The notes under the pieces were generated by a model. That model did not search any database. It saw nothing but the letters and a program-made list of their open reading frames with translations, and was not told the origin of the DNA. Below, in pieces: positions 29,583 through 61,730 of a DNA stretch of 64,000 bases (position 1 is its first letter; the number at the start of each line of letters is the position of its first letter). Made by a program: the position numbers and the translations under genes. The stretch covers positions 1 to 64,000 of IMG/VR virus record IMGVR_UViG_3300032214_000715; one strand, written 5' to 3'.

Positions 29583-29652
29583 ATAAATAAAGTGTAGTTC
29601 GCGAATGTTGGAATTCCAACTACTCTATAACTGATAGGAGTCACAGCAAATG
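29583..29652 (+). promoter_or_regulatory. Late promoter plus structured leader of GIY-YIG gene (copy 1)
   Basis: ATAAATA; GTAGTT/AACTAC stem; GAAT/ATTC inner stem; GGAG; CAGCAAATG. Confidence 0.7.
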
Positions 29653-30462
29653 TATTTAGCATACGTGTATAGACTTACACACAAAATTAATGGGCATTTT
29701 TATATAGGATATCGATGTAGAAACATAAAACTCAAACTTCTTCCAGAAGATGATTTGGGAGTAGTATACTTTACTTCGTCAAAATATATTAATAAAACCA
29801 ATTTTTCTGAATATCACGCTGAGATATTATTTAAATCAACTTCTTCAAATGAAGCATATGATTTTGAAAATAAACTCATACAGGAATCTTGGAATAATCC
29901 CTTATTACTGAATAGAAGTTTTCAACAAAACGGAAATCTTAGATTCAAAATAACAGAGGACGGGTCTAACAAGCTGAGTAAACTAAATAAAAATAAAAAA
30001 TGGTATAACAACGGCGTCAAAGAAATTTATTCTCACTATAAACCAGATAATTTTGAAGAAGGGAGACTTAAAAATCCATTTCCAAAAAATAAAGGGTGGA
30101 CAAAAAATTATAATTGGTATAATAACGGGAACAAAGAAATACTTCTCGAAAAAGACAAAGTTCCTCCTTTCGGATTTATTAAAGGAAAATTACCTGCCAC
30201 AGAAGATACTAATAAAAAAATTAGTATCACTATGAAACAAATTGCCCCAGCAAAAGGAAAAAAATGGTATACTAACGGAAAACAGTCTGTTTTGACACAC
30301 AAGTGCCCACATGGGTGGAATCCAGGACACTCGCATGGATCAGGAAATTCTCATTTAAATAGAGATTACAGCGGCTATCATTGGTATACAGACGGAAAGA
30401 ACACTATAAGGGCACGAGAGTGCCCAGAAGGATTTTCATTAGGAAGAAAAGTTAAATTCTAG
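29650..30462 (+). CDS. GIY-YIG homing endonuclease-like with KWYxxG repeats
   Basis: [18 protein letters not shown]; five KWYNNG/WYTDG repeats; antisense to neighbours. Confidence 0.8.
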
Positions 30463-31036
30463 AATTAATTACTTTGTCGGCTAATCCAAAATTAACTGAT
30501 GACTGAGCGTCCATATAGTTATCTCTAGTCATTGCTTGCTTTAATTCTTCTACACTTTTTCCGGTATTTTTTGAATATATATCTATAAGTGTATTATTCA
30601 GTCTAATCATTTCTTCCATTTGAATTTCTGCATCCCACACTGTTCCACGCGACCCGCCAGAAACAGAATGAATCATGTGTCTTGCTCGCGGCAATATAAA
30701 TCTTTTACTTTTGACGCCAGCACTCGCAAGTAAACTACCCATTGAGCAAACGCTTCCGATAGCTATGGTACTTACGTCGCAACTTATAAAATCCATAGTG
30801 TCCAATATAGCCAATCCAGCTGTAACAGACCCACCGGGACTATTAATATAGAGATGAATATCCTTATTGGAATCTTCGCTTTCTAGAAACAATAATTGAG
30901 CTACAATTAAATTTGCCATTTGATCATTAACTTCGCCTTCTAATAAAATAACTCTGTCTTTTAGAAGACGACTATAGATATCCATAGCCCTTTCGCCTTT
31001 TGAAGTGTTCTCAATTACCATTGGTACTAGTGCCAT
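30452..31036 (-). CDS. clpP: ATP-dependent Clp protease proteolytic subunit
   Basis: [21 protein letters not shown] (Ser), MIH, RDNY. Confidence 0.95.
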
Positions 31037-31641
31037 TATTTAACCTTTCTTGTTGTTGAGTTTGTAATCATTTGTGTGGGTGTGGATATCATATCGCACA
31101 CTTTAAATTTTAGTGCCTCTTCGGCGCTAAGCCAACGATCTTGCGCCGGCAATAAGTATTCTTTTATCACATCATCGTCCGCTTCAGTACAAAGACGATA
31201 ATTTTCTATCATCCTTGTGTGAGTCAACTCATATTCACGCATAGTAGCAAAAAGCTCGTGTAGTTTTCCTTCGTTATACCAACTAAATTGATGAGATAGT
31301 ATGCTTGTATTTGGAGTTAGTGTTCTACGACCCTTTGTACCGTTCATAAAAATAAGTAATCCACAACTAGCAATCTGCCCTAGACCTACTGTTTTAATCG
31401 GTATGTTGCTGTTTCTCATTACATCAATCAGAGCAAAAGTAGTTTGTAATTCTCCGCCCTCGCTACAGATCAGTAACTGTAACTCAGTCTTTTTTTTCTT
31501 AGAAACGTAGTTTTCGTACAGAATCCATTCAATAACCGGCTTTATTGACTCGTCATTTACTTCGCCCATAAACACGTATATTCCGGAATTATTCAATGCT
31601 TCAGAATGCGTGCTATCAGTGTCTTCTTGTTCAGTTGCCAT
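31036..31641 (-). CDS. clpP: Second, divergent ClpP paralog
   Basis: ICSEGG, IASCG (Ser), [13 protein letters not shown]. Confidence 0.85.
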
Positions 31642-31745
31642 AGTGTAATCCTTTGTGTATACTACATTAAAAATTTATCACGGTCAAGCGATAAGGAAAA
31701 TTTTTACTTACAGTCGTACCAATAAATATTACTGAGGAGAACATT

Positions 31746-31994
31746 ATGTTTAAGAAAATAAAAGAATTCTTTTTTGGGAAAGCAGAGCAAAAACCAGAAC
31801 AAGAGAAGATAGTACCGCCTATGATCAACGATCAAATCACCGATTCTGTTACTCAAGCAAATCCAAAGAGACCGCGTAGACCAAGAGCATTAAAAAATTC
31901 AGAAGTAAAATCTTCTCAATCAAAAAGTACCGCTCCAGCTATAAAAGCAGTTGCTTCAAAGACAGCAAAGAAAACTACAACGAATAAAAAATAA
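31746..31994 (+). CDS. Late basic hypothetical protein
   Basis: ATAAATA 31722-31728, GAGGAG SD; Lys/Ala-rich tail. Confidence 0.6.
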   Translation: MFKKIKEFFFGKAEQKPEQEKIVPPMINDQITDSVTQANPKRPRRPRALKNSEVKSSQSKSTAPAIKAVASKTAKKTTTNKK

Positions 31995-32695
31995 TGAAAA
32001 CTTCACTGGCAATAGACTTTATAAGTGATTTGAACTTGGATCACGATGATGTGTTTGACTGGTCCGACAAGCCTACTAGCTTATTTTGTGTTGTTGCCGG
32101 CGGAATAAGTTACAGTATTGAAAAAGTAAAAGAAGTACTAGATCATTTAAGTAAGCATTATCGTGGTATATTTTACATTGATGGAGCGCTAGAACACGAG
32201 TTGATTCCGGAATATGAAAGTAACATAGAGCAAATTAAGACTATCTGCGATAACATCAACAATGTGGTATTCTTACACAATCACGTTGTTGTTCTAAATG
32301 GGGTCGCGTTTGTTGCGTGTAATGGATGGTTTAGAAACAATCCTAATATTCAAACATCCGATGACATCGCGCTAGTATCAAGTCTAAAAATAGAAGATAT
32401 TGGCTATTTAACTAACACTATAAAAAATCTACAAAGTCACAGTGAGACCAAGCAAATAGTTGTTATTACAAGTTCAATACCGTCAGAGGAATTTTTATAC
32501 AAGTCCGAACACGAACTACAGGATAAAGTTGATCCAATAATAGCATTGCTAAACGATACCTCAAGTAAAGTAAAAACTTGGCTATTTGGCGGATCAAATT
32601 TATCGGTAGACGTTAAATTGAATAGCAGACGTTATGTTAATAACTCATTTAATTCTGCTCAGCCGTACTGGCCAAAAAGAATTGAAATAGATTAA
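31994..32695 (+). CDS. Degenerate metallophosphoesterase-fold protein
   Basis: ISDLNL (SDLH variant), AGGI, GALEHE in place of GNHE, WLFG. Confidence 0.6.
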   Translation: MKTSLAIDFISDLNLDHDDVFDWSDKPTSLFCVVAGGISYSIEKVKEVLDHLSKHYRGIFYIDGALEHELIPEYESNIEQIKTICDNINNVVFLHNHVVVLNGVAFVACNGWFRNNPNIQTSDDIALVSSLKIEDIGYLTNTIKNLQSHSETKQIVVITSSIPSEEFLYKSEHELQDKVDPIIALLNDTSSKVKTWLFGGSNLSVDVKLNSRRYVNNSFNSAQPYWPKRIEID

Positions 32696-32997
32696 GCTTC
32701 GCTTTCTATTTTAATTTGTAATGGATACCCTTGATTTCTTGCTTCAACTGTAACTTCTATTCCTTTTTGCTCGGCAATTTCGTAAGGAAGTACAGCCACT
32801 ACGGCACTACCACTGGTATGAATGTTTTCTGTTACTTTAATCGCCGAGTCACTAGTGTAATCAAAGTGAGACATTAAACTTTCTACTACAAATTCCATAG
32901 TAGTTATATCATCATTTACATAGATAATCTTAAACAGAGAAGGCTCTGAAATTTTTAGATTGGGTTTAATTTTTGTTTTGGTTTCTGTGTTTGCCAT
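32692..32997 (-). CDS. clpS: ClpS adaptor protein
   Basis: YVNDDITTMEFVV...IHTSGSAVV...AEQK. Confidence 0.88.
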   Translation of the reverse strand: MANTETKTKIKPNLKISEPSLFKIIYVNDDITTMEFVVESLMSHFDYTSDSAIKVTENIHTSGSAVVAVLPYEIAEQKGIEVTVEARNQGYPLQIKIESEA

Positions 32998-33044
32998 ATT
33001 GTGTTCCTATACACAGTGAGATATCTCACTGTGTATTTATTATA

Positions 33045-33479
33045 TTACTTAACGTAAGTTATAGCAATAGATTTTGGTCGGCTTTCTTCTGGAATTACAC
33101 GCTCCAAATGAATACTAAGAATTCCATTCTCTTGTGTGGCATCACGCACTTCTACGTGATCAGCAAGAGTCCAACTACGTACAAAATCACGACTGCTCAA
33201 ACCACGATGTACATAATCATAATGATCGTTACCAGTTTGTTTTCCTTCAATAGTTAGTTGCTGCTGCTTCACAGTAATGTTAATATCCCCCTGCTTAAAA
33301 CCAGCCACTGCTAATTCAATGAGCCAATTGTTTTCATCGGTTTTGATGATGTTAAAAGGGGGATAATTAGTTTGATTCGCACGTACAGCTTCTTCAAAGT
33401 GATCAAACATACGATCAAAGCCTACACCAAAGCGATGTAGTTGTGGAATATCAATAGAACGAACTTGTAGATTTGTCAT
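33045..33479 (-). CDS. Small heat shock protein Hsp20 (IbpA-like)
   Basis: GVGFDRMF, NYPPFNI, LAVAGF, HRGLSSRDF, NGILSI. Confidence 0.92.
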   Translation of the reverse strand: MTNLQVRSIDIPQLHRFGVGFDRMFDHFEEAVRANQTNYPPFNIIKTDENNWLIELAVAGFKQGDINITVKQQQLTIEGKQTGNDHYDYVHRGLSSRDFVRSWTLADHVEVRDATQENGILSIHLERVIPEESRPKSIAITYVK

Positions 33480-33614
33480 TTTATTTCTCCTATAAGCAAG
33501 AATGACTTTTGAACCGTAACCCTCTAGGGCGTTACTAATGTAGTGTGACTCATTCACACTACATTCTTATTTATCTTAACATACACTACGCAAAATAGTA
33601 TACTATTTTGGTAA

Positions 33615-33821
33615 TTAGTACATCTTTTTTGGAAGTTCCTGACTATCTAGATATTTTTTCCAGCGATTACGAGCTTTGCTCTTTGCTACTTTTTTATCTA
33701 TGCTGGGCTTTACATAAAATTCACGTTCTCGTAGTGTTTGTAGCAAACCACTATCGGCTACTTTCTTTTTGAACTTACGCATCGCAATTTCGAAATTGTC
33801 TTTTGTATTAACTACCTTCAT
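33615..33821 (-). CDS. rpsU: Ribosomal protein S21
   Basis: FEIAMRKFKKKV..SG....REFYVKPS. Confidence 0.88.
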   Translation of the reverse strand: MKVVNTKDNFEIAMRKFKKKVADSGLLQTLREREFYVKPSIDKKVAKSKARNRWKKYLDSQELPKKMY

Positions 33822-35032
33822 TGTTTCTCCAACAAAAACTTAGCGTCTTGTACTAATTCCGCTGTTATATTTATACTCTTTATCTTTTCTTTAAGATAAC
33901 TCTGTATATTGTACATATGAGGCAAAAGCACTCTTTCTATTTCACTGTGTAAGCCTCTTGCCCCAGTTTTTAGAGATAAACAATTTTCTGCTATAAGTTC
34001 TATAGCATTGTTATCAAATGAAAGTGATATTCCATCTAACTGAAATAGATACTTGTATTGATCAATATAGCTATTTTTTACATTTAACAAAATTTGAATC
34101 AATTGTTCTTTTGTCAATTCTCCAATAGACACTCTGCTGGTAAATCTTCCAGTAAATTCCGGTATCATTCCAAATTTAGTCAAGTCATCAGGAGTAACTA
34201 GTGGTAAATAATCCTGTTCTTTTACGTCAGCTTTTATTTTTGCTCCAAAGCCAATACTGTTTCCATCTACTCGTTTAGCTATGATTTCATTTAATCCAAC
34301 GAATGCTCCTCCGGCAATAAAGAGAATATTAGTAGTATCCACTTCTATCATATCGCTATTTGGGTTTTTTCGCTTGCTGCCCTGTGGCACTCTACACATA
34401 GTGCCTTCTACTAATTTAAGCAGTGCTTGTTGAACACCCTCACCGCTAACGTCACGTGTGATACTGGCACTTTCACTTTTACGAGCAACTTTGTCGATTT
34501 CGTCTATAAATACTATACCACGTTGAGCCTTGTCAACGTCTCCATCGGCGGCAGCCAATAGTCTAACAATCATACTTTCAACATCGTCGCCAACATAGCC
34601 AGCTTCAGTTAAGCTAGTAGCATCGGCCACGACAAATGGAACATCCAGATACTCGGCAACCGTTTTTGCTAACAATGTTTTTCCACTGCCAGTGGGTCCC
34701 AATACAAGAACATTACTTTTTTGTATTTTGATGTTTGAATCTTTATTGTTGATTCTCTTGTAATGATTGCTCACGGCAACACTTAGTATCATTTTGGCGT
34801 GTTCTTGCCCAATAACATAACGATCCAAGAACGATTTGATATCATCTGGATACAAACTCGTCTTTACATTTTGTAAATCGTTGATGCTATCGGACTCATC
34901 CAATAGTAACTCATTACATAGTTCAACGCAGTCATTACATATGGCTGTTTTTTCACCTACGATTAGCTTTTTTACTACACTCTTGTGTTTACCACAAAAG
35001 GAGCATTCTTGGAAATAAAGTACTTCGCTCAT
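33818..35032 (-). CDS. clpX: ClpX ATPase
   Basis: CSFC zinc domain, [23 protein letters not shown] loop, GARGL. Confidence 0.97.
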
Positions 35033-35057
35033 TAATTTAGTTGTAATATACAGATAT

Positions 35058-36566
35058 TTAGTTATTTTTTAAGTAATTTGATATTTCAGCTTGTTCGCCA
35101 TCGGTCAAGTACTCTAGCTTGTATTTGTTTGCTTCTAACTGAGAAATCAAGTACATAATGTATTTTACACTATGTGTGTAATCAGTCACTACTTTTTTAT
35201 CAATGCTTACCCATTTTTTAGAATCAAACACGTACACCTTATTTGGAACACTATCTGTTCTTATATAAAACTCTCCATTAAACGCTTCCTTAGGAAACTC
35301 AGTTCCAAAATTTACAATAGTCGTATTTTTGCTTGAGTTCTTAAATACCAAATCAGGTCTAATAGCTTTCAGCGCGTTTATACTGGTTAATTTTCCATTA
35401 TAGTGAACATAGGACTGATCTTCATAAAATTTAATTTTTTCAACAGTATTACTAGTATCCTCACTGTTAGTCTCGATTACTATTGTAGTTGGTAGCAGAT
35501 TGTAACGAGTACTGTAATTATCAGCACGATAATCGGCGACGTTATGCGGAACATCATCTTCATTCGATGAGTGCTTAAACACTTGTGGACCTACTGGTTC
35601 AACACCCGGTGGATGTCTAGTGTCTGGAGTTTTAAATAAATATTTGTGTTTACTCAAATCAAACTGATCTTTTATCGCATCTGATAAATTTTCTGCTGTG
35701 ACTGGCTCAACACCGTCATTTAACGCTTTTTGCTCTATATCATCTGTCGTTTCAGTCACCTCATCAGTCATCACAGCTTGTTGTGGTTTCTTTTCTTCTC
35801 GTTCCCATTTTAGACTGTTATTTGCGGCCAAAATTAATATGATGGCAAGCGGATCAAACACAATAACTATCATAATAATTACCCAGCGAACCGCTCTTTC
35901 AAGTAAATTTGTATCGGGATTATCACCGTATATCAGCGCTGCGATATATTTAATTGGCCCAACTTCTGCCTCTACTTTGCGCTGACTTGCTGATATTGGT
36001 GCTCGTTCCTCGTTGAGTTTAGCAATTATTGTTTGTGCCTCGCCAATTTCCTTTTGTAGCTTTGTTCTTTCTGCTGACTGTTGACGGCGAATTTGTACAG
36101 AACGTTCAGCACTCTGCTCACTATCACTGCGAGACATTCTTTGATTTACTTGCTCGTCCATCTGCTGTAATGCGCGACGAGCAGTATCTATATTATCACG
36201 CTGTGTTTTAATTTTTTCATCAATCAACGCAACTTTTGCCGCTACATCTCCGCTAACTAATCCGGTGTCACTGTGTGCTTTTGAAAGTAATCCAAAAATT
36301 CCCATACTGGTTAAAAATGCCAGCGCAATAACCGCTGCGGTAAGATAAAGCTTGATGCTCCAAGCGGCACGATTCCAATATTTGTGTAGCCATACTGTAG
36401 TAGTAATTTTGGCTATCTCTAAAATTGCTCCCATTACTATGATTGGGATAACTGCTCCGGCAAATATCGCAGTCAAACCAATTACACTGTAATAAGCGGC
36501 AATAGCACTGATACACAGTGCTATAAATAGTACAAATCTACTAAAGGTAAAAAAATTATTAAGCAT
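35058..36566 (-). CDS. Membrane protein with long coiled coil
   Basis: 3 N-terminal TM, coiled coil, TM pair; CTAAATA 36573-36579. Confidence 0.7.
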   Translation of the reverse strand: MLNNFFTFSRFVLFIALCISAIAAYYSVIGLTAIFAGAVIPIIVMGAILEIAKITTTVWLHKYWNRAAWSIKLYLTAAVIALAFLTSMGIFGLLSKAHSDTGLVSGDVAAKVALIDEKIKTQRDNIDTARRALQQMDEQVNQRMSRSDSEQSAERSVQIRRQQSAERTKLQKEIGEAQTIIAKLNEERAPISASQRKVEAEVGPIKYIAALIYGDNPDTNLLERAVRWVIIMIVIVFDPLAIILILAANNSLKWEREEKKPQQAVMTDEVTETTDDIEQKALNDGVEPVTAENLSDAIKDQFDLSKHKYLFKTPDTRHPPGVEPVGPQVFKHSSNEDDVPHNVADYRADNYSTRYNLLPTTIVIETNSEDTSNTVEKIKFYEDQSYVHYNGKLTSINALKAIRPDLVFKNSSKNTTIVNFGTEFPKEAFNGEFYIRTDSVPNKVYVFDSKKWVSIDKKVVTDYTHSVKYIMYLISQLEANKYKLEYLTDGEQAEISNYLKNN

Positions 36567-36606
36567 AGATAGTATTTAGCGACAAGATGTCGCTCAAAAC
36601 ACTAGA

Positions 36607-37277: not shown

Positions 37278-37279
37278 GA

Positions 37280-37842: not shown

Positions 37843-37844
37843 GG

Positions 37845-38712: not shown

Positions 38713-38713
38713 T

Positions 38714-52648: not shown

Positions 52649-52658
52649 GAAGCTCACT

Positions 52659-55207: not shown

Positions 55208-55234
55208 AATAAATATCCTGCTATTAGATATTTA

Positions 55235-55456
55235 TTATTTTAATTTATTAATTACTTCGTTGGCCTCTTCTAAAGAACTCGTAGTCACTACTTCATCTAT
55301 GTAATTTACTATCAACAGTTCCTGTAGAGCTACCGCCAGAGTGTGATCGGACTTACTTAATGATAGCTTCCAAAGTTCCAATTCTAGAGCATCGGGTATA
55401 TTCCACATGATGTCTAGCATTTCAATTTGTTTTGTAGTTAATCCAGTTATTATCAT
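55235..55456 (-). CDS. Hypothetical protein
   Basis: MIITGLTTKQIEMLDIMW. Confidence 0.55.
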   Translation of the reverse strand: MIITGLTTKQIEMLDIMWNIPDALELELWKLSLSKSDHTLAVALQELLIVNYIDEVVTTSSLEEANEVINKLK

Positions 55457-55491
55457 TGTTTTCTTACTAGTTGTATACACCACAATCTGAA

Positions 55492-55782
55492 TTAATGTAG
55501 TGTCTCGGTAAGTGGTAGAGCGAAATCATCAACCGCCTTCTTTAAATCTTCTATTTCCCATCCACTATCTACTAGAATTTCTATTAGTCTTGTAAATAAT
55601 GTAAAAGAGGCCATGCCCTGAACATAGTTTTCGTCACGATTATCAAAGTCAAAACTTTGTAATTTTGGCAATACGTCGTCTTCTAAGAATTCATCTACGA
55701 TATTACTGGTATAGTCAAATTCCCAATCTTCGTAAACAGCATCGTCTACATCCGCGCTAACTTCATTTGTTTCGTTTTTCAT
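55492..55782 (-). CDS. Acidic hypothetical protein
   Basis: AGGAG SD; late promoter about 55807. Confidence 0.6.
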   Translation of the reverse strand: MKNETNEVSADVDDAVYEDWEFDYTSNIVDEFLEDDVLPKLQSFDFDNRDENYVQGMASFTLFTRLIEILVDSGWEIEDLKKAVDDFALPLTETLH

Positions 55783-55858
55783 ATTTGCTCCTATAGTAGA
55801 CTTAAGTATTTATCTACTATAGCACAACTAGCAAGCCGAGTCACTATATTTAGTAGTG

Positions 55859-56290
55859 TTATTTGTACCGATAATTTATAGAGTCTACGTTTTCTCTGAA
55901 AATCACCGCGCCGTTTTTTAGATGAAATCTGCGAGCCATCTCTGTTTTTGGACTTAGTGTTACAAAAGTGTTTATGGTATTGAATTTTTCAGTGATGGCA
56001 GACAAACATTCACGCAACAATTGTGCTCCAGCGCCCGGGCAGTAACTCCATATGGTATAGAAAACCGCGGTAGTTGGACACGATGATGTTAGGATTAAAT
56101 CATTTACAGATTCTGGAATAAAATCGTGAAGACTTATACACACCATACTAGTTGGTCGTTGATTCTCAACTAAAGTGGCTATAAATCTATTTTCAGTAAC
56201 ACGAAATTCTCTTGAAATTTCTGGACGAACTGGGTCATCCTTAATGTATTCAATCAATGAGTCGGCGGTAGAGGTAATTAAATGTAGCAT
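55859..56290 (-). CDS. Hypothetical, possible GNAT-like fold
   Basis: FYTIWSY..GAG..LL, TLSP, RFHLKNG. Confidence 0.5.
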   Translation of the reverse strand: MLHLITSTADSLIEYIKDDPVRPEISREFRVTENRFIATLVENQRPTSMVCISLHDFIPESVNDLILTSSCPTTAVFYTIWSYCPGAGAQLLRECLSAITEKFNTINTFVTLSPKTEMARRFHLKNGAVIFRENVDSINYRYK

Positions 56291-56405
56291 AATAACCGTA
56301 TTTATGACGTAAAGTTAAAAATAGCATTTTATATAAAAAAATAGAGACTATATCAACTTAGAATCAATACTGTAACAGGAGTTTGATTTATTGTCAAGTA
56401 ATAAT

Positions 56406-56477
56406 GATAAATAAAGGTGTAGGTCACGGAATTGGCGTTCCCACCTACTCTAATGCTTACAAGGAGCAATCAGCATG
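56406..56477 (+). promoter_or_regulatory. Late promoter plus structured leader of GIY-YIG gene (copy 2)
   Basis: ATAAATA; GTAGGT/ACCTAC stem; GGAAT/GTTCC inner; TGCT/AGCA over GGAG. Confidence 0.7.
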
Positions 56478-57347
56478 TTTATTTATTACGTTTACGCATA
56501 CCTCAGAAAAGATGGCACACCCTACTACATTGGTAAGGGTAAAGGTTACAGGGCGTGGATAGATCACCGTAAAAAGAAGAATGGAAAACTTATTGGAGTA
56601 TCAACACCAACAGACAGAAGTCGAATAGTTCTTCTAGAGACTAATCTGAGTGAAGTTGGAGCATTGGCGTTGGAGCGTAGATACATCATTTGGTATGGAC
56701 GCAAAGACAACAAGACAGGAATCCTTAGAAACCTTACCAATGGTGGTGAAGGATTGTCAGGAATAGTTAGAGATCCTGTAAAATTTATGGGGGAAAAGAA
56801 TGGAATGTATGGTAAAAATCATACAGAGAAAGTTCGCACTGAGCACTCTCAAAGAATGCTTGGGAACAAGAATGGGTGTGGATGGGAACCTACTCCCGAG
56901 CAGCTTGCCAAGATGAGGCATCGTGCAAAAAACAGAGAACAGAAAGTCTGTCCTCATTGTGGAAAGAGTGTCAGCGGATCAAATTACACACGTTGGCATG
57001 GTGACAACTGTAGAGTTATTTTAGATCCAGTATTACTGGAGAAACGTGGATCAAAGTTTAGAAAAGAAAAGATAAAGTGCTTATATTGCGATGGTGAATT
57101 TATACCATGTAGGTATCATGAACTGCACGGGGAAAATTGTTCTAAAAGTCCTTCTAAAATTGCCACGCGAGAAGAGAATAGAAGAAGATCGTTAGACTTG
57201 AGACCAGAGTATACATGTGAATACTGTAGTATAAAGACAAAGACCCGCACCAACTACACGAGATGGCACGGGCCTAATTGCAAGGACAGTATCAGATGTC
57301 GTAGCGAGGAATCATTACTGCCTTCCTCATTACAAATTCTGGGGTGA
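56475..57347 (+). CDS. GIY-YIG-like homing endonuclease with CxxC-NYxRWHGxxC zinc repeats
   Basis: [18 protein letters not shown]; NLTNGGEG; three C-terminal Zn repeats. Confidence 0.8.
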
Positions 57348-58719
57348 ACTGCTCACTGTCTCCACTCAGCACTGCACTAGCGATAGCAGGTGAGAACCCA
57401 CTAACCAGTGCAACACCGCTCTCATCAAACTTGGCAGGTGCATGTCCTGAATGGTTTAGGTTCCAGAAAACGATGCGGGGCACTTGATAACCTGCTTCTT
57501 CGTATTGACGAGCGATCATTTGCATGGCACTCTCGGATACGCTTACAGACTGGTCAAAATTCATGTCACTTAGGATCACCAGAGTTCCTGGCATCTCAGA
57601 CTGACCTACGCCAGCATTGACTGCGGTTCTCAGGATCAACTCCATGGCCGCGTTCAAGTTGGTGTTCATGCCCCAATCACTCCTAGTCATCTGAGCGATC
57701 TTCTCGGTGATAGTGCCCTTCAAACGCAGCAGTTCCGGTTGTGCGCTGAAGGTCAGAAAACAGTCCTTGAATACGCCACTGTTCTTGTCAGCGAAGTACA
57801 GACCAAGACTCACAGCAACATCCATGCAAGACAACTCGCTCTTACTGTTACGACCACCGACCTTACAGGTCATACTGCCACTAACGTCTACTAGAGGCAG
57901 AACACTAGCGTCACCGATGAAGTCGGGCAGTGCAGCCCACTGTGCTTCAATCACCGCGATCTCATCAGCAGAGACTTCACTCTCACGCATCCAAGTGTCG
58001 ATAGGGGTGATGTGACCCTTCAACACATCATAGGGGTATACTGCGCTGGCCGAAATTTTTACACCGTCCTCACCCTTGATCAGAGACTGGACATACTCAC
58101 TGTACTTGGCTGTGTTGCGACCAAAAGCCTTCTTGTAACGTGCGTGAGCAACACTAGGAACATGGCTGAAGTTGATGTTGTCCCAGTCCTTGGCGCACAT
58201 CTGGGACTCCACGACCTTAGTCAGACCGACCAACATCTTGCGGTAAGCCTTAGGGCTCAGACCCATGAAGACGCGCAGTTCCAGTGCCAGCGGACCCTGA
58301 CGAGGCATCCACTTCGCGCACAGTCCGTTTCCAGACTTCAGCGCATCACTGATCATGGTGTATGCTACCTGCTTGAGTTCAGGTGTCATTACGACCAACA
58401 GATCGTCCCAACGGCCCAACTCAGGCAACTTGGTCATAAGACGCATTGCGTCCTGTGGGTAGTACTGCTCCATGTGAAGCAGAATGTCCCGAACCAGTTG
58501 TCGTTCGCCGCTACCACCACGAGCATCACGGATCCACTGTACCACGCGCAGTGTCAGTTCGCTGTCCTGCACGTATGCAGCTACGAACTTAGGCACAATG
58601 CCAACACCACGGGTAGCGCCGTAGAACAGGTCTATCACAGCGTTAGCGGTAGCCACACGTGCTACCATACCGTTCTCGGTAACGGTCAGTTGATTGTCGA
58701 TTGCTTGTGCGAATGTCAT
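57292..58719 (-). CDS. DUF2828-type vWA protein, Ro60/TROVE-related
   Basis: [44 protein letters not shown]. Confidence 0.85.
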
Positions 58720-58734
58720 TTATTTTTTCCTTTC

Positions 58735-58823
58735 AACAGATTAGTTATCATTGGTCCTATCACGGTCTCCAGCCAGATTCGGGCTTTTTTATAGTGATTA
58801 AAATTGGTTGCTGGATCTAATCT
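58735..58823 (-). ncRNA. Y-RNA-like element A
   Basis: AGAUUAG-AUC-CAGCAA...CUAAUCU-GUU. Confidence 0.6.
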
Positions 58824-58872
58824 AAGAACTTATTATATGTTACTTACTATTTTTAGTCTACAAATTCGGATA

Positions 58873-58989
58873 AACTGTATACGTTTCTTGCCTGCTGCTC
58901 TGCCGACTGAGCTACATCTCACATTTGAGAGATGGAAGGACTCGAACCTTCGACACACTGGGTGATTTAATCGTTGCTGTATGTATACA
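58873..58989 (-). ncRNA. YrlA-like Y RNA (circularly permuted tRNA mimic), element B
   Basis: UGUAUAC-AUA-CAGCAA; T arm GAAGG-UUCGAGU-CCUUC; looped acceptor CAUCUC/GAGAUG; D arm GCUC-AGUCGGCA-GAGC; GUAUACA-GUU. Confidence 0.75.
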
Positions 58990-59129
58990 AAAATATAACA
59001 GGATGATCGATACGGGTATTTTATTTCTCTGCTTGCCCCTTACACTAAAGGATTTTGTATCACAAGCACAGTCTAAATCGTTTAGACCCGATCCTAGTAT
59101 CTTGACTAGACACAAAGTTGGCTAACCCC

Positions 59130-59187
59130 AACAGGACGATTAGTTGACTAATCAGTTCAGAGTATTTTAAATTGCCGAAATCATCCT
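59130..59187 (-). ncRNA. Y-RNA-like element C (alternative distal 3' partner at 58997-59007)
   Basis: AGGAUGAU-UU-CGGCAA...AUCGUCCU-GUU. Confidence 0.55.
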
Positions 59188-59195
59188 AATCAAAT

Positions 59196-59348
59196 AACGG
59201 GATAGTTGTTGCCTTCTTTTATTCAAGTGAGAAATGCTAGACTCACCTCGACCGGATAAACATAAAACGCTTCACAGGTTGCCCTCTGCAAGATATGTCT
59301 ACTTTGCCCAGTCCATCCATAATTTTATGAATTTGCTGTACCTATCCC
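59196..59348 (-). ncRNA. Y-RNA-like element D
   Basis: GGGAUAG-GUA-CAGCAA...CUAUCCC-GUU. Confidence 0.6.
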
Positions 59349-59381
59349 AAATCTCTTTGTTGTTACGATAGATGTATTATG

Positions 59382-59594
59382 TCATCGTTTACTATTCATT
59401 TCAAGCATTTTGGATGACTTGCTTTCTTTGACCTTGACCAAATTGGCAAGATTCATCCAAACTAAACGCTGATTGTCCGGGCGATGAACCTCAACGAAGT
59501 CCACGCCATCTACACGCCTACGATTATCAAAATTCTCGCATACCCATACTTCACCGGTACGTGGATTAGATAGAGTCACTGACTTTGCCTTCAT
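59382..59594 (-). CDS. Hypothetical protein
   Basis: AAGGAG SD; MKAKSVTLSNPRTGEVW. Confidence 0.55.
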   Translation of the reverse strand: MKAKSVTLSNPRTGEVWVCENFDNRRRVDGVDFVEVHRPDNQRLVWMNLANLVKVKESKSSKMLEMNSKR

Positions 59595-59604
59595 AGTTTT
59601 CTCC

Positions 59605-60090
59605 TTACGCTGTCTGACGACGAGATTCCAAACTTTTGAATTGATCCGCAGCATACGATGCCGCAAAAGCACGAGGTTTCACAAATGGAATTACTCCACA
59701 CATGCCCTTAACGTAACCAATGGCTTCATTGATAACGAGATTGCTATTGTGAAACTCACTTGGATTTAGGTCCAAGTGAACTTCTACCTCAAATGGCACT
59801 TCCTTGGCTAGTTCTAGATAAAGATTGGCTACACGATATACTTCATTCATTAATCGCATGCGTGGCTTATCCGCACGTTGATCGTAGTCACGTTCACGAT
59901 CCACTGCGCCGAAAATCTTACAACCATTATTGCCGTTTACGTGAATAACTACAGCGGTAATATAATCAGCATACCAGACATTGTTATGCTGTAGGCGTTC
60001 ACTGTCACAGCCAATATAAATTTTAGTGTTGTCGGACAGATTTTCACAAAACGTCACAACTTCATCAATGTCAATATGCTTCTTATACAT
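59605..60090 (-). CDS. RNase H-like YkuK (DUF458) family protein
   Basis: IYIGCDS, RLMNEV, EVHLDLNP, KP.AFAAS.AAD. Confidence 0.8.
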   Translation of the reverse strand: MYKKHIDIDEVVTFCENLSDNTKIYIGCDSERLQHNNVWYADYITAVVIHVNGNNGCKIFGAVDRERDYDQRADKPRMRLMNEVYRVANLYLELAKEVPFEVEVHLDLNPSEFHNSNLVINEAIGYVKGMCGVIPFVKPRAFAASYAADQFKSLESRRQTA

Positions 60091-60101
60091 TTTAGTCTCC
60101 T

Positions 60102-60389
60102 TTAAAAAACATCATGCCTCTTTGGTTTATTTCTTTCACTTCTATCTTTGATTTTACCTAGATACTCTCGCCCAACTGCGCCAGACTCAATATCATCAAA
60201 TACAATCTTAGTGGGAATACTTTTTAGCTTGCGCTGCTCCAAATACGTAGACACGTTCATGTCACTGTACTTCATAGCATCGTCTTCTTGCTTACGCACA
60301 CGATGTATTTCCCTCAATCGCTCACTGGCAACTAGAATCAAATCGAATCTGTTGCCGATGCGATCACACATTTTATCAAAATCATTCAT
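60102..60389 (-). CDS. rpoZ: RNA polymerase omega subunit (RpoZ) homolog
   Basis: IGNRFDLILVASERLREI matches RpoZ N-terminal signature; TTGACA-16-TATAAT promoter 60415-60442. Confidence 0.65.
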   Translation of the reverse strand: MNDFDKMCDRIGNRFDLILVASERLREIHRVRKQEDDAMKYSDMNVSTYLEQRKLKSIPTKIVFDDIESGAVGREYLGKIKDRSERNKPKRHDVF

Positions 60390-60472
60390 TATTAGTCCTA
60401 TCAAAGTTATTATAATTATACACAAGCATCAACCGATGTCAAGCAGTATTTTACTATTTACTAAATAATAGT

Positions 60473-60637
60473 ATGGCATCACGCACTGTATACACGCTAA
60501 ACGGTCTTACTTTTCACGTAAGCATAAGTGATATGAGCACTTATTGTATTATAATACTTGATCGTTACACTGGTGACGTTGATATTAAGTACTTCAGTGA
60601 TTGGTATGAAGCACTAATGTACATTAAAGAATTTTAA
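60473..60637 (+). CDS. 54-aa late ORF (below cutoff)
   Basis: CTAAATA 60461-60467; MASRTVYTLNG...MYIKEF. Confidence 0.4.
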   Translation: MASRTVYTLNGLTFHVSISDMSTYCIIILDRYTGDVDIKYFSDWYEALMYIKEF

Positions 60638-60825
60638 TTAGCAATTAATTCTCTAAGCTTAAGCAATTGTGTCGGCGTCAGCACCATTTCAAACCGCATT
60701 TCTGTATTGTCATTCCATTGAGTGTAAAAACGCAAATGTTGAAATTCGGGACCGACCGAAATTGGCTGAGTCAACTCAGCATATACACGATAATTTCCAT
60801 TTTCACTAATTAGAACTTTGCTCAT
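60634..60825 (-). CDS. Hypothetical protein
   Basis: AAGG SD; downstream of tRNA. Confidence 0.55.
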   Translation of the reverse strand: MSKVLISENGNYRVYAELTQPISVGPEFQHLRFYTQWNDNTEMRFEMVLTPTQLLKLRELIAN

Positions 60826-60841
60826 ATTATACCTTTATGTT

Positions 60842-60931
60842 TGGCGGATAGTGTGAGATTCGAACTCACGATAGAATTTCTCCTATGACGGTTTAGTAGA
60901 CCGTTGGTTTCAGCCGCTCACCCAACTATCC
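60842..60931 (-). tRNA. tRNA-Ser, anticodon ACU, class II
   Basis: GGATAGT/ACTATCC acceptor, G73-CCA, ACGGT-CTACTAA-ACCGT, long variable arm, GTGAG-TTCGAAT-CTCAC. Confidence 0.9.
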
Positions 60932-60974
60932 TTTAGATATATTTACTACGCGAGACAAACGCTAAAATATTTTA

Positions 60975-61577
60975 CTACACAGTTTGTTGACGCTGTTCTA
61001 ACTTTTTGCGAAGCATGGTATGAATGCCAGGATTCACTCTGAGTACATCAGCCATAAGTTTATGCCTAATAAAATTCCTAGTATAACGAGTATCGTTATT
61101 AGAATGATCCTCAATCCACTTAACATTTTTGCGTCTCGCCCAATCTTCTAATTCATACTTTCTATTTAATAGAAATGGTCTGATAACGTTGCCACGACGA
61201 TATGGGATCAAGCTACTGGTTCCATGTAAACTACTCCACACCCAAGTCTCAGCTACATCATCTAAATGATGAGCAGTGACTACAGTATCAAATTGATTTA
61301 GAAAATTATATCGTTCCTCACGCCAATGTTCTTCTGGACTTTGCTCACGATCACGATGAACTTTTGTCATTTCACCAATATGTAATGCTACATTATTTTT
61401 TGAGCAAAAATCAGTTAAAAACTCCTGAGCACGATTACTGTTTTCGGTGTTATGATTAAAGAAAGCAGCATCGACGTTATGATTTCGTTGTAAGAAATCT
61501 AACAATACCATACTGTCAATGCCACCACTAAGTGCCACGGTCAACTTTCTGGGCAATGATCCTAAAACTTTGATCAT
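60975..61577 (-). CDS. tilS: tRNA(Ile)-lysidine synthase, catalytic domain only
   Basis: ALSGGIDS PP-loop, AHHLDD.AET, IRPFL, ED.SN....TRNFIRH. Confidence 0.9.
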   Translation of the reverse strand: MIKVLGSLPRKLTVALSGGIDSMVLLDFLQRNHNVDAAFFNHNTENSNRAQEFLTDFCSKNNVALHIGEMTKVHRDREQSPEEHWREERYNFLNQFDTVVTAHHLDDVAETWVWSSLHGTSSLIPYRRGNVIRPFLLNRKYELEDWARRKNVKWIEDHSNNDTRYTRNFIRHKLMADVLRVNPGIHTMLRKKLEQRQQTV

Positions 61578-61658
61578 ACTACATCACAACACTGTTTCCA
61601 TTACAGAATTTAAGTATAACATAATAAAAGAAAAACGCAAGAACTATCTTGTTCAAAT

Positions 61659-61730
61659 GATAAATAAAAGTGTCAGTCGCGATACGTCAATATCCACTGA
61701 CTCTAACGCTTTTTGGGAGCATCAGCAATG
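61659..61730 (+). promoter_or_regulatory. Late promoter plus structured leader of GIY-YIG gene (copy 3)
   Basis: ATAAATA; GTCAGT/ACTGAC stem; GATA/TATC inner; GCT/AGC over GGAG; CAGCAATG. Confidence 0.7.

What the first reader, a model, noticed from the sequence alone, without database searches (positions are those of the whole stretch)
29583..61730. Conserved covarying RNA leader in front of three dispersed GIY-YIG endonuclease genes
Seen at 29583, 56406 and 61659: ATAAATA-AA(A/G)GTG, an outer stem that covaries (GTAGTT/AACTAC, GTAGGT/ACCTAC, GTCAGT/ACTGAC), a C(G/A)CG linker, an inner covarying hairpin, CTCTA, a small hairpin covering GGAG, then CAGC(A)(A)ATG. The proteins themselves are quite divergent. 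Known: T4 I-TevI uses an RBS-hiding hairpin, but there the late promoter bypasses it, whereas here the whole structure is transcribed. Inference: a cis-regulatory RNA (autorepression site or switch) or the functional end of a mobile element, possibly an RNA cofactor of the nuclease.
Basis: partly seen in the sequence, partly recalled or inferred. Interest (0 to 1): 0.7.

Follow-up and report, generated by a model that had tools for sequence, protein, structure and literature searches.

The report
Antisense RNA module on phage homing-endonuclease genes
The repeated covarying "leader" in front of the endonuclease genes is real and widespread in uncultured freshwater phages, but its base-pairing is preserved on the opposite strand, so it most likely encodes a small antisense RNA that restrains these selfish nuclease genes.

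Summary
An ~85-nt module sits in front of three GIY-YIG genes in the window. A fourth copy lies outside it, before an HNH gene. More than 200 distinct copies occur in IMG/VR contigs, 1-13 per jumbo genome, before GIY-YIG, HNH and Vsr-like genes. Two hairpins covary strongly, and no Rfam family matches.

The interpretation needs changing. Non-Watson-Crick cells are almost all A.C on the mRNA strand (about 140 variable ones, against 2 G.U). These are G.U wobbles on the complementary strand. The same 19 pairs are 89.4% standard on the sense alignment and 98.0% on the antisense one. RNAalifold gives -13.0 and -21.4 kcal/mol. The antisense fold is the more stable in 188 of 194 copies.

A second late-promoter core, TAAATA, lies on the antisense strand. 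It reads TATTTA in codons 2-4, in three reading frames. It sits 5 nt from the structure, mirroring the sense promoter.

Best reading: face-to-face late promoters yield the nuclease mRNA and a ~65-70-nt antisense RNA. That RNA has an anti-Shine-Dalgarno hairpin and a terminator-like hairpin, resembling IS10 RNA-OUT and IS200 art200. No transcript data were available. Dassa et al. 2009 had already noted hairpins plus TATAAATA here.

The parts
29583..29589 (+). Copy 1: sense late-type promoter core (cATAAATA). The first paired G (29594) lies 4 nt after TAAATA.
29594..29623 (-). It has 11 pairs, and the two invariant C residues (G on the antisense strand) are bulged. On the - strand it is followed by CAC-UUUAUUUAU.
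29625..29646 (-). On the antisense strand the loop carries the anti-Shine-Dalgarno CCU; on the sense strand it holds AGGAG.
29653..29658 (-). Copy 1: TATTTA in codons 2-3, which reads TAAATA on the - strand. This is the proposed antisense late promoter, 5 nt from CAGC (29644-29647).
29583..29647 (-). Copy 1: predicted antisense RNA, about 65 nt. It folds as two hairpins at -14.2 kcal/mol (z = -2.8).
29650..30462 (+). Copy 1: GIY-YIG homing-endonuclease gene (270 aa). Its 3' end overlaps the convergent ClpP gene (30452-31036, -) by 11 nt.
56407..56413 (+). Copy 2: sense late-type promoter core (gATAAATA). The first paired G is at 56419.
56419..56448 (-). Copy 2: hairpin B. A56426 opposite C56442 is an A.C mismatch on the sense strand and a G.U pair on the antisense strand.
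56450..56473 (-). Copy 2: hairpin A, with the Shine-Dalgarno AAGGAG on the sense strand.
56480..56485 (-). Copy 2: TATTTA, forming a full ATAAATA on the - strand at 56480-56486. It lies 5 nt from CAGC (56471-56474).
56407..56474 (-). Copy 2: predicted antisense RNA, about 68 nt, folding at -15.7 kcal/mol.
56475..57347 (+). Copy 2: GIY-YIG homing-endonuclease gene (290 aa). Its 3' end overlaps the convergent gene 57292-58719 (-) by 56 nt.
61660..61666 (+). Copy 3: sense late-type promoter core. The first paired G is at 61672.
61672..61701 (-). Copy 3: hairpin B.
61703..61725 (-). Copy 3: hairpin A. C61707 opposite A61721 is a C.A mismatch on the sense strand and a G.U pair on the antisense strand.
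61731..61736 (-). Copy 3: TATTTA in codons 2-3, 4 nt from CAGC (61723-61726).
61660..61726 (-). Copy 3: predicted antisense RNA, about 67 nt, folding at -19.2 kcal/mol (z = -3.0).
61728..62339 (+). Copy 3: GIY-YIG homing-endonuclease gene (203 aa; the real start is the ATG at 61728). Its 3' end overlaps the convergent metallophosphatase gene by 11 nt.

Best explanation
The module is a portable expression-and-control cassette for free-standing homing-endonuclease genes. It is built from two face-to-face T4-type late promoters about 70 bp apart.

The left promoter (ATAAATA) starts the nuclease mRNA at the foot of the first hairpin. The right one is the complement of the TATTTA embedded in codons 2-4. 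It fires outward and would make a 65-70-nt antisense RNA with these parts:
- A 5' end at the G opposite the last C of CAGC.
- Hairpin A: 8 pairs and a 7-nt loop carrying the anti-Shine-Dalgarno CCUU.
- One unpaired base.
- Hairpin B: 11 pairs with two invariant bulged G.
- A U-rich tail, CAC-UUUUAUUUAU, which is the complement of the sense promoter. The tail would terminate the RNA.

This RNA is fully complementary to the mRNA's 5' UTR from +1 to just before the AUG. By pairing, probably loop to loop first, it would block the ribosome-binding site and/or trigger cleavage. That would keep a potentially toxic nuclease low late in infection. Copies in one genome share long identical stretches, so some repression in trans is possible.

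Shown by computation: the structure, its covariation, its strand bias, both promoter-like hexamers with fixed spacing, the late-gene association of the motif, and the link to several nuclease families.

Inferred, not shown: that the antisense strand is transcribed from its own promoter, that hairpin B terminates, and that the effect is repression of translation.
For: 1. Strand of the structure.
- On 216 unique copies, hairpin B has 74 A.C or C.A cells and 1 G.U.
- Hairpin A has 68 variable A.C cells, plus an invariant A51.C69 (111/111 copies), against 1 G.U.
- A.C on the sense strand is G.U on the antisense strand.
- The same 19 pairs form standard pairs in 89.4% of cells on sense alignment A3 and 98.0% on antisense alignment A4.
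- RNAalifold predicts 13 pairs at -13.0 kcal/mol on the sense alignment. On the antisense alignment it predicts all 19 pairs unaided, at -21.4.
- The antisense minimum free energy is lower in 188 of 194 copies, mean -17.9 against -12.6 kcal/mol.
- All four copies of this genome fold into the two-hairpin antisense shape.

2. Antisense promoter.
- TATTTA follows CAGC by 4-6 nt in 85 of 93 copies found through a 5' anchor. It falls in three reading frames relative to the ATG: 58, 15 and 12 copies.
- Among 114 true copies found through a core anchor that touches neither promoter, 102 have both TAAATA hexamers. The spacing is 5 nt in 97 (sense) and 87 (antisense).
- Both sides show T at -1 and G at +1.
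- In the 'MSS' variants the ATG moves upstream of CAGC, yet CAGC-N5-TATTTA is kept.

3. Promoter identity.
- ATAAATA lies upstream, co-oriented, of 54 of 281 genes of this genome, and 60 of 101 occurrences are intergenic.
- The genes it precedes include tail sheath, baseplate wedge and hub, tail-fibre-like and virion structural genes.
- Many other contigs carrying the module encode T4 Gp23, Gp20, terminase, UvsY and UvsW.

4. Terminator-like tail. There are 6-8 U among the 10 nt at positions 3-12 after hairpin B in 103 of 115 core-anchored copies.

5. Independence from neighbours. The A.C excess holds whether the upstream gene is co-directional (18:0) or divergent (74:1).

6. Trans potential. 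Non-cognate antisense/leader duplexes score -38 to -65 kcal/mol, against -20 +/- 4 for shuffles. Copies 2 and 4 share 14 identical nt across the Shine-Dalgarno and CAGC.

7. Precedent. art200 lies opposite the IS200 tnpA 5' UTR (PMC4513863). CfrI is an antisense RNA over a homing-endonuclease gene in cyanophage S-PM2 (PMC2984593).
Against: - No transcript evidence. No RNA run was listed for this phage or for a common relative, and no cultured phage carries the module.
- The hexamer pair never varies, so covariation cannot separate 'promoter' from 'pairing partner of the sense promoter'.
- TATTTAT also encodes the Ile-Tyr of the GIY motif in the commonest frame, which could explain part of its conservation.
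- The base after TATTTA is T in only 72% of unbiased copies, so a full ATAAATA is not universal.
- Hairpin B is separated from the U-run by 2 nt, and the run is interrupted. The simple terminator scan did not call it, because the stem is bulged.
- Both promoters are of the same temporal class, so the logic of the regulation rests on relative strengths that cannot be read from sequence.
- In about 70% of divergent contexts no separate TAAATA was seen before the neighbouring gene. The outward promoter might therefore serve that gene instead (ORF starts there were called crudely).
- z-scores for single antisense RNAs are modest: -0.6 to -3.0.
Confidence: 0.5

Rival explanations
1. Sense-strand cis-regulatory leader. 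In this reading the mRNA's own 5' UTR is the functional RNA. The 5'-terminal hairpin stabilises the late transcript. The small hairpin tunes access to the Shine-Dalgarno sequence. In read-through transcripts from upstream promoters, the promoter sequence UAAAUA pairs with UAUUUA after the AUG (helix P1). That closes a three-way junction and silences translation. It would be an extended version of the I-TevI/mobE design.
For: - The sense promoter sits so that +1 falls at the foot of the hairpin.
- The large hairpin pairs in 96% of cells on the sense strand too.
- P1 complementarity is perfect and near-universal.
- The known T4/Aeh1 paradigm is of this kind (PMC2988022). Dassa et al. read these hairpins this way.
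- The loops of the sense hairpin often read YUGG.
Against: - There is a near-total lack of G.U pairs and about 140 variable A.C cells on the sense strand.
- The small hairpin pairs in only 79.7% of cells on the sense strand, against 99.1% on the antisense strand.
- P1 is six A-U pairs. It appears in the minimum-energy fold of read-through RNA in only 38 of 132 copies, with a median pair probability of 0.04.
- In most loci the upstream gene is divergent, so there is no obvious sense read-through to silence.
Confidence: 0.2
2. An element serving the flanking host genes on the opposite strand. Here the cassette carries a terminator (hairpin B plus the U-run) for opposite-strand transcripts that run antisense through the nuclease gene. 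It may also carry an outward-facing late promoter that restores expression of the neighbouring gene cut off by the insertion. The hairpins would then be that transcript's 3' end or 5' leader.
For: - The upstream neighbour is divergent in 109-115 loci and co-directional in 40-60, including all three window copies.
- Only 31 of 104 divergent neighbours show their own TAAATA in the gap.
- The tail after hairpin B is U-rich.
- T4 endonuclease genes are known to embed promoters for downstream host genes (PMC2988022).
Against: - The antisense-strand constraint is just as strong in co-directional loci, where no gene is served (A.C 18 against G.U 0).
- A terminator alone does not explain the covarying hairpin A or the fixed CAGC-N5-TATTTA unit.
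- In this genome the neighbours have their own ATAAATA promoters next to the module, at 29575-29581(-) and 56299-56305(-).
- A terminator directly downstream of a promoter meant to drive a neighbouring gene works against that purpose.
Confidence: 0.17
3. A DNA-level element. In this reading the conserved ~85 bp act as a homology block or a single-strand DNA hairpin. They would let endonuclease cassettes recombine, shuffle promoters or move between sites, much like a mobile regulatory cassette or the end of an element. On this view the RNA folding is incidental.
For: - The same module heads unrelated nuclease families and occurs in both T4-like and jumbo phages. This implies modular exchange.
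- Truncated remnants exist that end inside hairpin A (L011, L062 and L071:1135).
- G.T is the most tolerated DNA mismatch, so a bottom-strand DNA hairpin would give the same asymmetry.
Against: - Stems diverge by compensatory changes while structure is kept. This lowers homology, the opposite of what recombination needs.
- There is no matching module at the 3' end, because the gene ends overlap the neighbours.
- No recombinase or transposase is associated.
- Both promoter hexamers and the Shine-Dalgarno sequence sit at functional distances.
Confidence: 0.08
4. An RNA partner of the nuclease itself: either an autorepression site bound by the protein, or a guide or cofactor RNA.
For: - I-TevI represses its own late promoter by binding an operator (PMC2988022).
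- The bulged nucleotides are invariant, which suggests recognition by some factor.
Against: - One conserved RNA precedes GIY-YIG, HNH, HNH_3, Vsr-like/DUF559 and other proteins with different DNA-binding parts.
- The three window proteins are only 16-23% identical to each other.
- Stems and loops vary freely by covariation, so there is no copy-specific match to a protein or target.
Confidence: 0.03

Closest known systems
IS10 RNA-OUT/RNA-IN and IS200 art200/tnpA: cis-encoded antisense RNAs of mobile-element genes (PMC4513863; IS10 details from my own knowledge)
   Same: - A selfish element's gene has an outward-facing promoter at its 5' end.
- That promoter makes a short, stably folded antisense RNA of about 70-90 nt, complementary to the 5' UTR and Shine-Dalgarno region of the mRNA.
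- The two promoters face each other.
- The antisense stems carry bulges.
- Action in trans among copies is possible.
   Different: - Here the gene is a homing endonuclease in lytic phages, not a transposase.
- Both promoters are T4-type late promoters.
- The antisense tail is the complement of the sense promoter.
- The RNA has two hairpins.
- Expression and function are untested, and there is no sequence relationship.
Late promoter embedded in a hairpin that hides the ribosome-binding site: T4 I-TevI, I-TevII, I-TevIII and segB, and Aeh1 mobE (PMC2988022)
   Same: - Free-standing or intron-borne endonuclease genes carry a TATAAATA-type late promoter and RNA structure immediately upstream.
- The likely purpose is to restrict nuclease synthesis.
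   Different: - There, the promoter lies inside the 5' arm, so late transcripts lack the inhibitory hairpin. Here both covarying hairpins lie downstream of the promoter.
- The only promoter-containing helix here (P1) is weak.
- The structure is selected on the other strand.
- The covariance model finds nothing in T4 or Aeh1.
Hairpins and motifs in the 5' UTRs of free-standing endonuclease genes of 'fractured genes' from GOS metagenomes (Dassa et al. 2009, PMC2677866)
   Same: - The source is aquatic metagenomes, including freshwater Lake Gatun.
- The genes are GIY-YIG and Vsr-like.
- A hairpin lies upstream of the start in 15 of 16 loci, and TATAAATA in 10.
[quoted passage not shown]
- The endonuclease 3' ends overlap the neighbouring gene.
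- This is very probably the same or a sister element.
   Different: - Identity could not be checked, because the figures and supplement are not held.
- They read it as a sense-strand translational hairpin.
- They reported no covariation statistics, strand analysis or antisense promoter.
- No intein domains were seen among the top families next to the copies I sampled.
CfrI antisense RNA of cyanophage S-PM2 (Millard et al. 2010, as described in PMC2984593)
   Same: It is an antisense RNA overlapping a free-standing homing-endonuclease gene in a T4-like aquatic phage, co-expressed with that gene.
   Different: - CfrI is about 225 nt and also links to psbA.
- Its function is unknown.
- The model R1 finds no match in S-PM2.
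Rfam freshwater-2 RNA (RF02980)
   Same: - It is found in the same kind of phage contig: L051:3490-3567, 66 bits.
- It is likewise preceded by a GATAAATA promoter and followed by a Shine-Dalgarno sequence and start codon.
   Different: - It has a different sequence and fold, with three hairpins.
- Its downstream gene in L051 is not an endonuclease.
- It does not match any copy of the module, even at E<=1.

Membership tests
T4-type late-promoter / RBS-sequestering hairpin (I-TevI, segB, Aeh1 mobE) | The late promoter lies within the 5' arm of the inhibitory hairpin, so late transcripts cannot form it. | tested here: not met
   TAAATA ends 5 nt upstream of the first paired base of the covarying hairpins. 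The only helix using the promoter (P1) is six A-U pairs and is present in the minimum-energy fold in 38 of 132 copies.
T4-type late-promoter / RBS-sequestering hairpin (I-TevI, segB, Aeh1 mobE) | A stable hairpin sequesters the Shine-Dalgarno sequence on the mRNA strand. | tested here: inconclusive
   On the sense strand only the last two bases of GGAG are in the stem. Hairpin A pairs in 79.7% of sense cells, with frequent C.A and an invariant A.C. Sense folds are weak, at -10 to -16 kcal/mol.
T4-type late-promoter / RBS-sequestering hairpin (I-TevI, segB, Aeh1 mobE) | Sequence or structure homology to the characterised examples. | tested here: not met
   The covariance model R1 finds no match at E<=1 in T4, Aeh1, S-CRM01 or P-SSM2, nor in S-PM2.
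Cis-encoded antisense RNA regulators of mobile-element genes (IS10 RNA-OUT, IS200 art200) | A promoter on the opposite strand, at or inside the 5' end of the gene, facing outward. | tested here: met
   This was tested as a sequence motif only. TAAATA lies on the antisense strand 4-6 nt from the structure in 85 of 93 and 102 of 114 copies, in three reading frames. The same hexamer marks late structural genes of this phage. Activity was not tested.
Cis-encoded antisense RNA regulators of mobile-element genes (IS10 RNA-OUT, IS200 art200) | The antisense transcript itself is a stable, conserved stem-loop RNA. | tested here: met
   98.0% standard pairs on the antisense alignment, with 15 covarying pairs. 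RNAalifold recovers all 19 pairs. A.C greatly outnumbers G.U on the sense strand. The antisense fold is more stable in 188 of 194 copies.
Cis-encoded antisense RNA regulators of mobile-element genes (IS10 RNA-OUT, IS200 art200) | The antisense RNA is detectable in vivo and lowers translation of the element's gene. | not testable with these tools
   No RNA run was listed, and no cultured carrier was found.
Intrinsic (Rho-independent) terminator, antisense orientation | A G+C-containing hairpin followed directly by a U-run. | tested here: inconclusive
   Hairpin B has 11 pairs. It is followed after 2 nt by a tail with 6-8 U among 10 nt in 103 of 115 copies. The run is interrupted, and the simple scanner did not call it.
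Any Rfam 15 family | A match to a curated covariance model. | tested here: not met
   Gathering scan of the window: only a tRNA. Scan at E<=1 of six loci on both strands: nothing at any copy.
GIY-YIG homing endonucleases (the three window genes) | An N-terminal GIY...YIG motif plus the conserved Glu and Asn of the catalytic domain. | tested here: met
   Y7, Y18, G20, E67 and N86 are invariant in the 25-sequence alignment. The profile hits PDB GIY-YIG proteins at E=0.0025, then I-TevI and UvrC. Pfam GIY-YIG is weak, at E=0.0013, for copy 3 only. All three match PHROG homing-endonuclease families.
PeSL-type mobile regulatory cassettes of T4-like phages (promoter-early stem-loop; recalled from memory, not checked in a paper here) | An early promoter plus a stem-loop repeated on both sides of shuffled genes. 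| tested here: not met
   The promoter is of the late type. The module occurs only at the 5' side of the gene, and the 3' ends overlap neighbours.

The most novel reading that the evidence does not exclude
Homing-endonuclease genes of several unrelated nuclease families share one portable control module of the RNA-IN/RNA-OUT type, in freshwater T4-like and jumbo phages. Two face-to-face late promoters bracket a 57-nt overlap. The resulting small antisense RNA represses its own gene and also, through the conserved Shine-Dalgarno/CAGC block, the other copies in the genome (up to 13). That would give copy-number control of selfish nucleases within a virus. It would be the first conserved antisense-RNA regulator family for homing endonucleases, and a new structured phage sRNA class.
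Probability: 0.3. Interest if true: 0.8.

Novelty: new variant of a known kind. Interest (0 to 1): 0.66.

Why it matters
Homing endonucleases are the commonest selfish genes of large phages. How they are kept harmless is known mainly from a few T4 and Aeh1 cases, all of which use mRNA hairpins.

If the antisense reading is right, a large uncultured group of freshwater phages solved the problem as bacterial insertion sequences do. They would use a small antisense RNA, packaged in a cassette that can be put in front of any nuclease gene.

It would also add a widespread, strongly covarying RNA family that is absent from Rfam. It illustrates a method point as well: wobble asymmetry can overturn the assumed strand of a 'leader'. 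Finally, it explains why the first codons of these genes are frozen at the DNA level.

The compact bidirectional late-promoter/terminator design could be useful for engineering T4-type phages.

Tried and rejected
- **Pseudoknots or long-range partners for CAGC.** A mutual-information scan of 93 sequences gave only the nested helices. CAGC instead extends hairpin A by pairing with the CUA of CTCTA.
- **P1 (promoter:TATTTA) as the main explanation.** It is thermodynamically weak and never varies. I kept it only inside a rival.
- **Rfam.** No family matches. freshwater-2 is a different neighbouring motif.
- **Identity with CfrI of S-PM2, or with the T4/Aeh1 hairpins.** The covariance model finds nothing.
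- **Cultured carriers.**
  - blastn of a consensus-like copy against 50,697 phage records found none.
  - The model found nothing in Atu_ph07, Phosso, PA5oct, SCTP-2 or Vibrio phage 2.275.O.
- **Transcript evidence.** Only DNA runs hold the window, and no RNA run was listed for a common relative.
- **Empty-site allele.**
  - The nearest relative of the PP-loop gene next to copy 3 (67% identity, L235) has no module. Its gene order differs, so no clean boundary could be drawn.
  - The megablast of the window region against phages found nothing.
- **Simple terminator scan.** It does not call hairpin B, because the stem is bulged.
- **Gp23 in this genome.** No match, but the record is only 68% complete and the control was silent.
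- **Dassa et al. motifs.** Their figures and supplement are not held, so identity could not be verified.

Full report
**What is there**

The window is the first 64 kb of a 239,163-bp IMG/VR virus record (G000). The record is 39.8% G+C and estimated 68% complete. At 29583, 56407 and 61660 (+ strand) the same ~85-nt module precedes ORFs of 270, 290 and 203 aa.

All three genes lie on the + strand inside runs of - strand genes. Their 3' ends overlap the convergent neighbour by 11, 56 and 11 nt.

The diagnostic 12-13-mer occurs 3 times against 0.06 expected. A fourth copy lies at G000:219342-219426, in front of an HNH-type ORF.

The three window proteins are GIY-YIG nucleases:
- A profile of their N-domains with relatives has invariant Y7, Y18, G20, E67 and N86.
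- The profile hits PDB GIY-YIG proteins (E=0.0025), then I-TevI and UvrC.
- All three match PHROG homing-endonuclease families.

**How widespread it is**

I ran three exact-pattern scans of IMG/VR, each anchored on a different part of the module. Together they gave 219 distinct copies.

- With the 3' anchor, nearly all hits carried the whole module.
- With the core anchor, 114 of 137 unique hits were true copies and the rest were chance matches in coding DNA.
- Jumbo contigs carry 1, 4, 7, 8 and 13 copies, and G000 carries 4.
- Of 120 downstream ORFs: 28 have NUMOD3, 10 HNH_3, 10 HNH, 5 SegE_GIY-YIG, 3 HNH_5, 2 GIY-YIG, and 1 each DUF559 (Vsr-like) and I-TevI DNA-binding domain.

So the module belongs to free-standing homing-endonuclease genes in general, not to one protein family.

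Flanking genes in co-directional loci include T4 Gp23, Gp20, large terminase, UvsY, UvsW, a baseplate protein and ribonucleotide reductase. G000's own tail sheath is closest to the jumbo phages Atu_ph07 (35.6%), Phosso and PA5oct. DNA runs that share parts of the window are freshwater, lake or river metagenomes.

**The structure is real**

Mutual information on 93 sequences picks out only nested helices. I built a 56-sequence seed alignment (A3). On it:
- 15 of 19 pairs show changes on both sides.
- 0 of 500 column shuffles reach the observed covariation.
- Sliding the partner by 1-3 columns drops pairing to 22-47%.
- RNAalifold recovers the helices independently.

The large hairpin is continuous: 6 outer pairs, a bulged C, one G-C pair (A-U in some copies), a second bulged C, then 4 inner pairs. 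That explains why those two blocks are conserved. There is one compensatory U-A case.

**Which strand folds**

This is the main finding. Where a pair is not Watson-Crick, it is almost always A.C on the mRNA strand.

| Region | A.C or C.A cells | G.U cells |
|---|---|---|
| Large hairpin (216 copies) | 74 | 1 |
| Small hairpin, variable positions | 68 | 1 |
| Small hairpin, invariant A51.C69 | 111 of 111 | - |

A.C on one strand is G.U on the other. The parser I used to find stems allowed G.U and penalised A.C, so any bias runs the other way.

Further comparisons of the two strands:
- Counted by the tool on the same 19 pairs, standard pairs make up 89.4% of cells on the sense alignment and 98.0% on the reverse-complement alignment A4. 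For the small hairpin alone the figures are 79.7% and 99.1%.
- RNAalifold on A4 predicts all 19 pairs unaided at -21.4 kcal/mol. On the sense alignment it predicts 13 pairs at -13.0.
- The antisense core folds better than the sense core in 188 of 194 copies, with means of -17.9 and -12.6 kcal/mol.
- The four copies of this genome fold as two adjacent hairpins on the antisense strand: -14.2, -15.7, -19.2 and -14.6 kcal/mol.

A strand-specific mutation bias is a poor alternative. Both G-to-A and T-to-C changes on the sense strand are tolerated in stems, while C-to-T and A-to-G are not. That pattern matches selection for antisense G.U pairs.

**A second promoter**

ATAAATA is a general, oriented motif of this phage:
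- 60 of its 101 occurrences are intergenic, although only 11% of the genome is non-coding.
- It lies within 80 nt upstream of 54 of 281 genes, usually 15-26 nt before the start.
- Genes it precedes include tail sheath, baseplate wedge and hub, tail-fibre-like and virion structural proteins.

It is therefore a late-type promoter of the T4 TATAAATA kind. This inference comes from the motif, the late genes and the T4-like carriers. I did not look for the gp55 homologue.

In the module, TAAATA ends 5 nt before the first paired G. So the mRNA would start at the foot of the large hairpin.

On the other side, MAFFT aligns an almost invariant TATTTA just after the start codon. Among copies found through the 5' anchor, 85 of 93 have it 4-6 nt after CAGC. 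It falls in three different reading frames: 58, 15 and 12 copies. It is therefore a nucleotide-level element, not a protein one. TATTTA is TAAATA on the antisense strand.

In the core-anchored set, which is unbiased for both ends, 102 of 114 copies have both hexamers. The spacer is 5 nt in 97 (sense) and 87 (antisense). Both sides have T at -1 and G at +1. In the variant class whose proteins start MSS..., the ATG lies upstream of CAGC inside the hairpin. Even there, CAGC-N5-TATTTA is kept (rows L075, L116, L049 and L010).

**Model**

Two face-to-face late promoters bracket a 57-nt overlap. The outward one would give an RNA of 65-70 nt with these parts:
- One to three free bases at the 5' end.
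- Hairpin A, whose loop holds CCUU, the complement of the Shine-Dalgarno sequence.
- One unpaired base.
- Hairpin B, with two invariant bulged G.
- A tail, CAC-UUUUAUUUAU.

The tail has 6-8 U among 10 nt in 103 of 115 unbiased copies. So hairpin B looks like an intrinsic terminator, and its U-run is the complement of the sense promoter.

The RNA is complementary to the whole 5' UTR of the nuclease mRNA. On the mRNA strand, hairpin A is weakened by A.C mismatches. The ribosome-binding site would thus stay usable until the antisense RNA pairs with it.

This is how IS10 RNA-OUT and IS200 art200 work (PMC4513863; IS10 details from my own knowledge). An antisense RNA over a homing-endonuclease gene, CfrI, is known in cyanophage S-PM2 (PMC2984593). 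From my own knowledge, bulges in antisense stems are a known requirement for fast pairing in the CopA system.

Copies within G000 could cross-react. Non-cognate duplexes score -38 to -65 kcal/mol against -20 +/- 4 for shuffles, and copies 2 and 4 share 14 identical bases over the Shine-Dalgarno/CAGC block.

**What is not shown**

No transcript data could be found, and no cultured phage has the module. The antisense promoter, termination at hairpin B and the repressive effect are all inferences.

The hexamer pair is invariant, so covariation cannot tell a promoter from a pairing partner. The alternative helix (P1) between the two hexamers in read-through mRNA is weak: it appears in 38 of 132 minimum-energy folds, with a median probability of 0.04.

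The upstream gene is divergent in about two thirds of loci. Only 31 of 104 such neighbours show their own TAAATA in the gap (with crudely called starts). So the outward promoter or the terminator might serve the host genes instead. Against that, the antisense-strand constraint is equally strict in co-directional loci (18 A.C against 0 G.U). In G000, moreover, the neighbours have their own promoters.

**Comparison with what is known**

- The T4/Aeh1 design places the late promoter inside a stable hairpin that hides the ribosome-binding site (PMC2988022). That defining feature is not met here.
- Dassa et al. 2009 saw hairpins in 15 of 16 5' UTRs of GIY-YIG and Vsr-like genes from ocean and Lake Gatun metagenomes. 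They found TATAAATA in ten of them, and two MEME motifs that complement each other (PMC2677866). That is very probably this element or a close relative. They interpreted it as a sense hairpin. I could not see their figure.
- Rfam has no matching family.

**Verdict**

The interpretation as an mRNA leader is only partly supported. The best-supported reading is a portable antisense-RNA control cassette for homing-endonuclease genes. I rate it a new variant of a known kind of regulation. I am about 85% confident that the structure is selected on the antisense strand. My confidence in the full mechanism is about 0.5.

Noticed in passing
G000:C1:219342-219426 (outside the window; locus L004:1498-1582): A fourth copy of the module lies in this genome, in front of an HNH-type endonuclease ORF (216 aa, ...IHHIDGD...). 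This shows that the module is not specific to GIY-YIG genes.
   Followed up: yes
L051:3490-3567 (-): A contig that carries the module also has an Rfam freshwater-2 RNA (RF02980, 66 bits, above the gathering score). It is directly preceded by a GATAAATA late-type promoter and followed by AAAGGAA-N-ATG of an ORF that is not an endonuclease (MGRPLKIAKAQ...). So freshwater-2 appears to be a late-gene 5' leader of the same phage group.
   Followed up: partly
window 30452-30462, 57292-57347, 62329-62339: The 3' ends of all three endonuclease genes overlap the 3' ends of the convergent neighbour genes (ClpP, a DUF2828/DUF7788 RNA-binding-like protein, and a metallophosphatase) by 11, 56 and 11 nt. 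Dassa et al. 2009 reported 6-69-bp overlaps for similar genes.
   Followed up: no
window, whole genome G000: ATAAATA is a general, strongly oriented promoter-like motif. It lies upstream of 54 of 281 genes, usually 15-26 nt before the start codon. Those genes include tail sheath, baseplate and tail-fibre genes. The window as a whole shows no enrichment (25 occurrences against 26 expected), because it is mostly a block of small - strand genes.
   Followed up: yes
window 60842-60931 (-) and 60975-61577 (-): A tRNA-Ser (anticodon ACT, 90 nt) lies directly downstream of a PP-loop ATPase gene of the TilS / tRNA-modifying type.
   Followed up: no
window 60415-60442 (-): There is a perfect sigma-70 consensus promoter (TTGACA-16-TATAAT, 12 of 12 matches) in front of the small - strand ORF 60102-60425. 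It is probably an early promoter read by the host polymerase.
   Followed up: no
window 30452-31036 (-), 33818-35032 (-), 57292-58719 (-): The phage encodes a ClpP protease (E=4e-70) and an AAA+ ATPase that matches ATP-dependent-protease families. It also encodes a 475-aa DUF2828/DUF7788 protein that PHROGs calls an RNA-binding protein.
   Followed up: no
L185:2852 and 4361, L155:10167, L159:2460, L214:1203: Nine of 102 copies found through the 3' anchor lack the sense TAAATA but keep both hairpins. Several instead have ATGACAACAA or GTCAA(A/T) upstream. A GTCAAT block about 10 nt upstream of the promoter also recurs in copies that do have TAAATA. This may be another promoter class.
   Followed up: no
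L075, L116, L049, L010, L098: In one variant class the start codon lies inside hairpin A (GACAU pairs with AUGUC), and the protein begins MSS. The Ser-Ser codons spell the conserved CAGC, and CAGC-N5-TATTTA is retained downstream.
   Followed up: partly
L324-L327: In 185,579 species genomes the module occurs only four times, all on contigs of uncultured MAGs. Three are binned as Bacteroidota (Mucilaginibacter, Bacteroides, Bacteroidetes) and one as a proteobacterium. These are probably mis-binned phage fragments and give at most a weak host hint.
   Followed up: no
L011:698-797, L062:10987-11086, L071:1134-1233, L030:3818-3917: Some copies are truncated. They keep the promoter and large hairpin but lose the Shine-Dalgarno/CAGC part and have no endonuclease ORF. 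They look like remnants after gene loss or recombination inside hairpin A.
   Followed up: no
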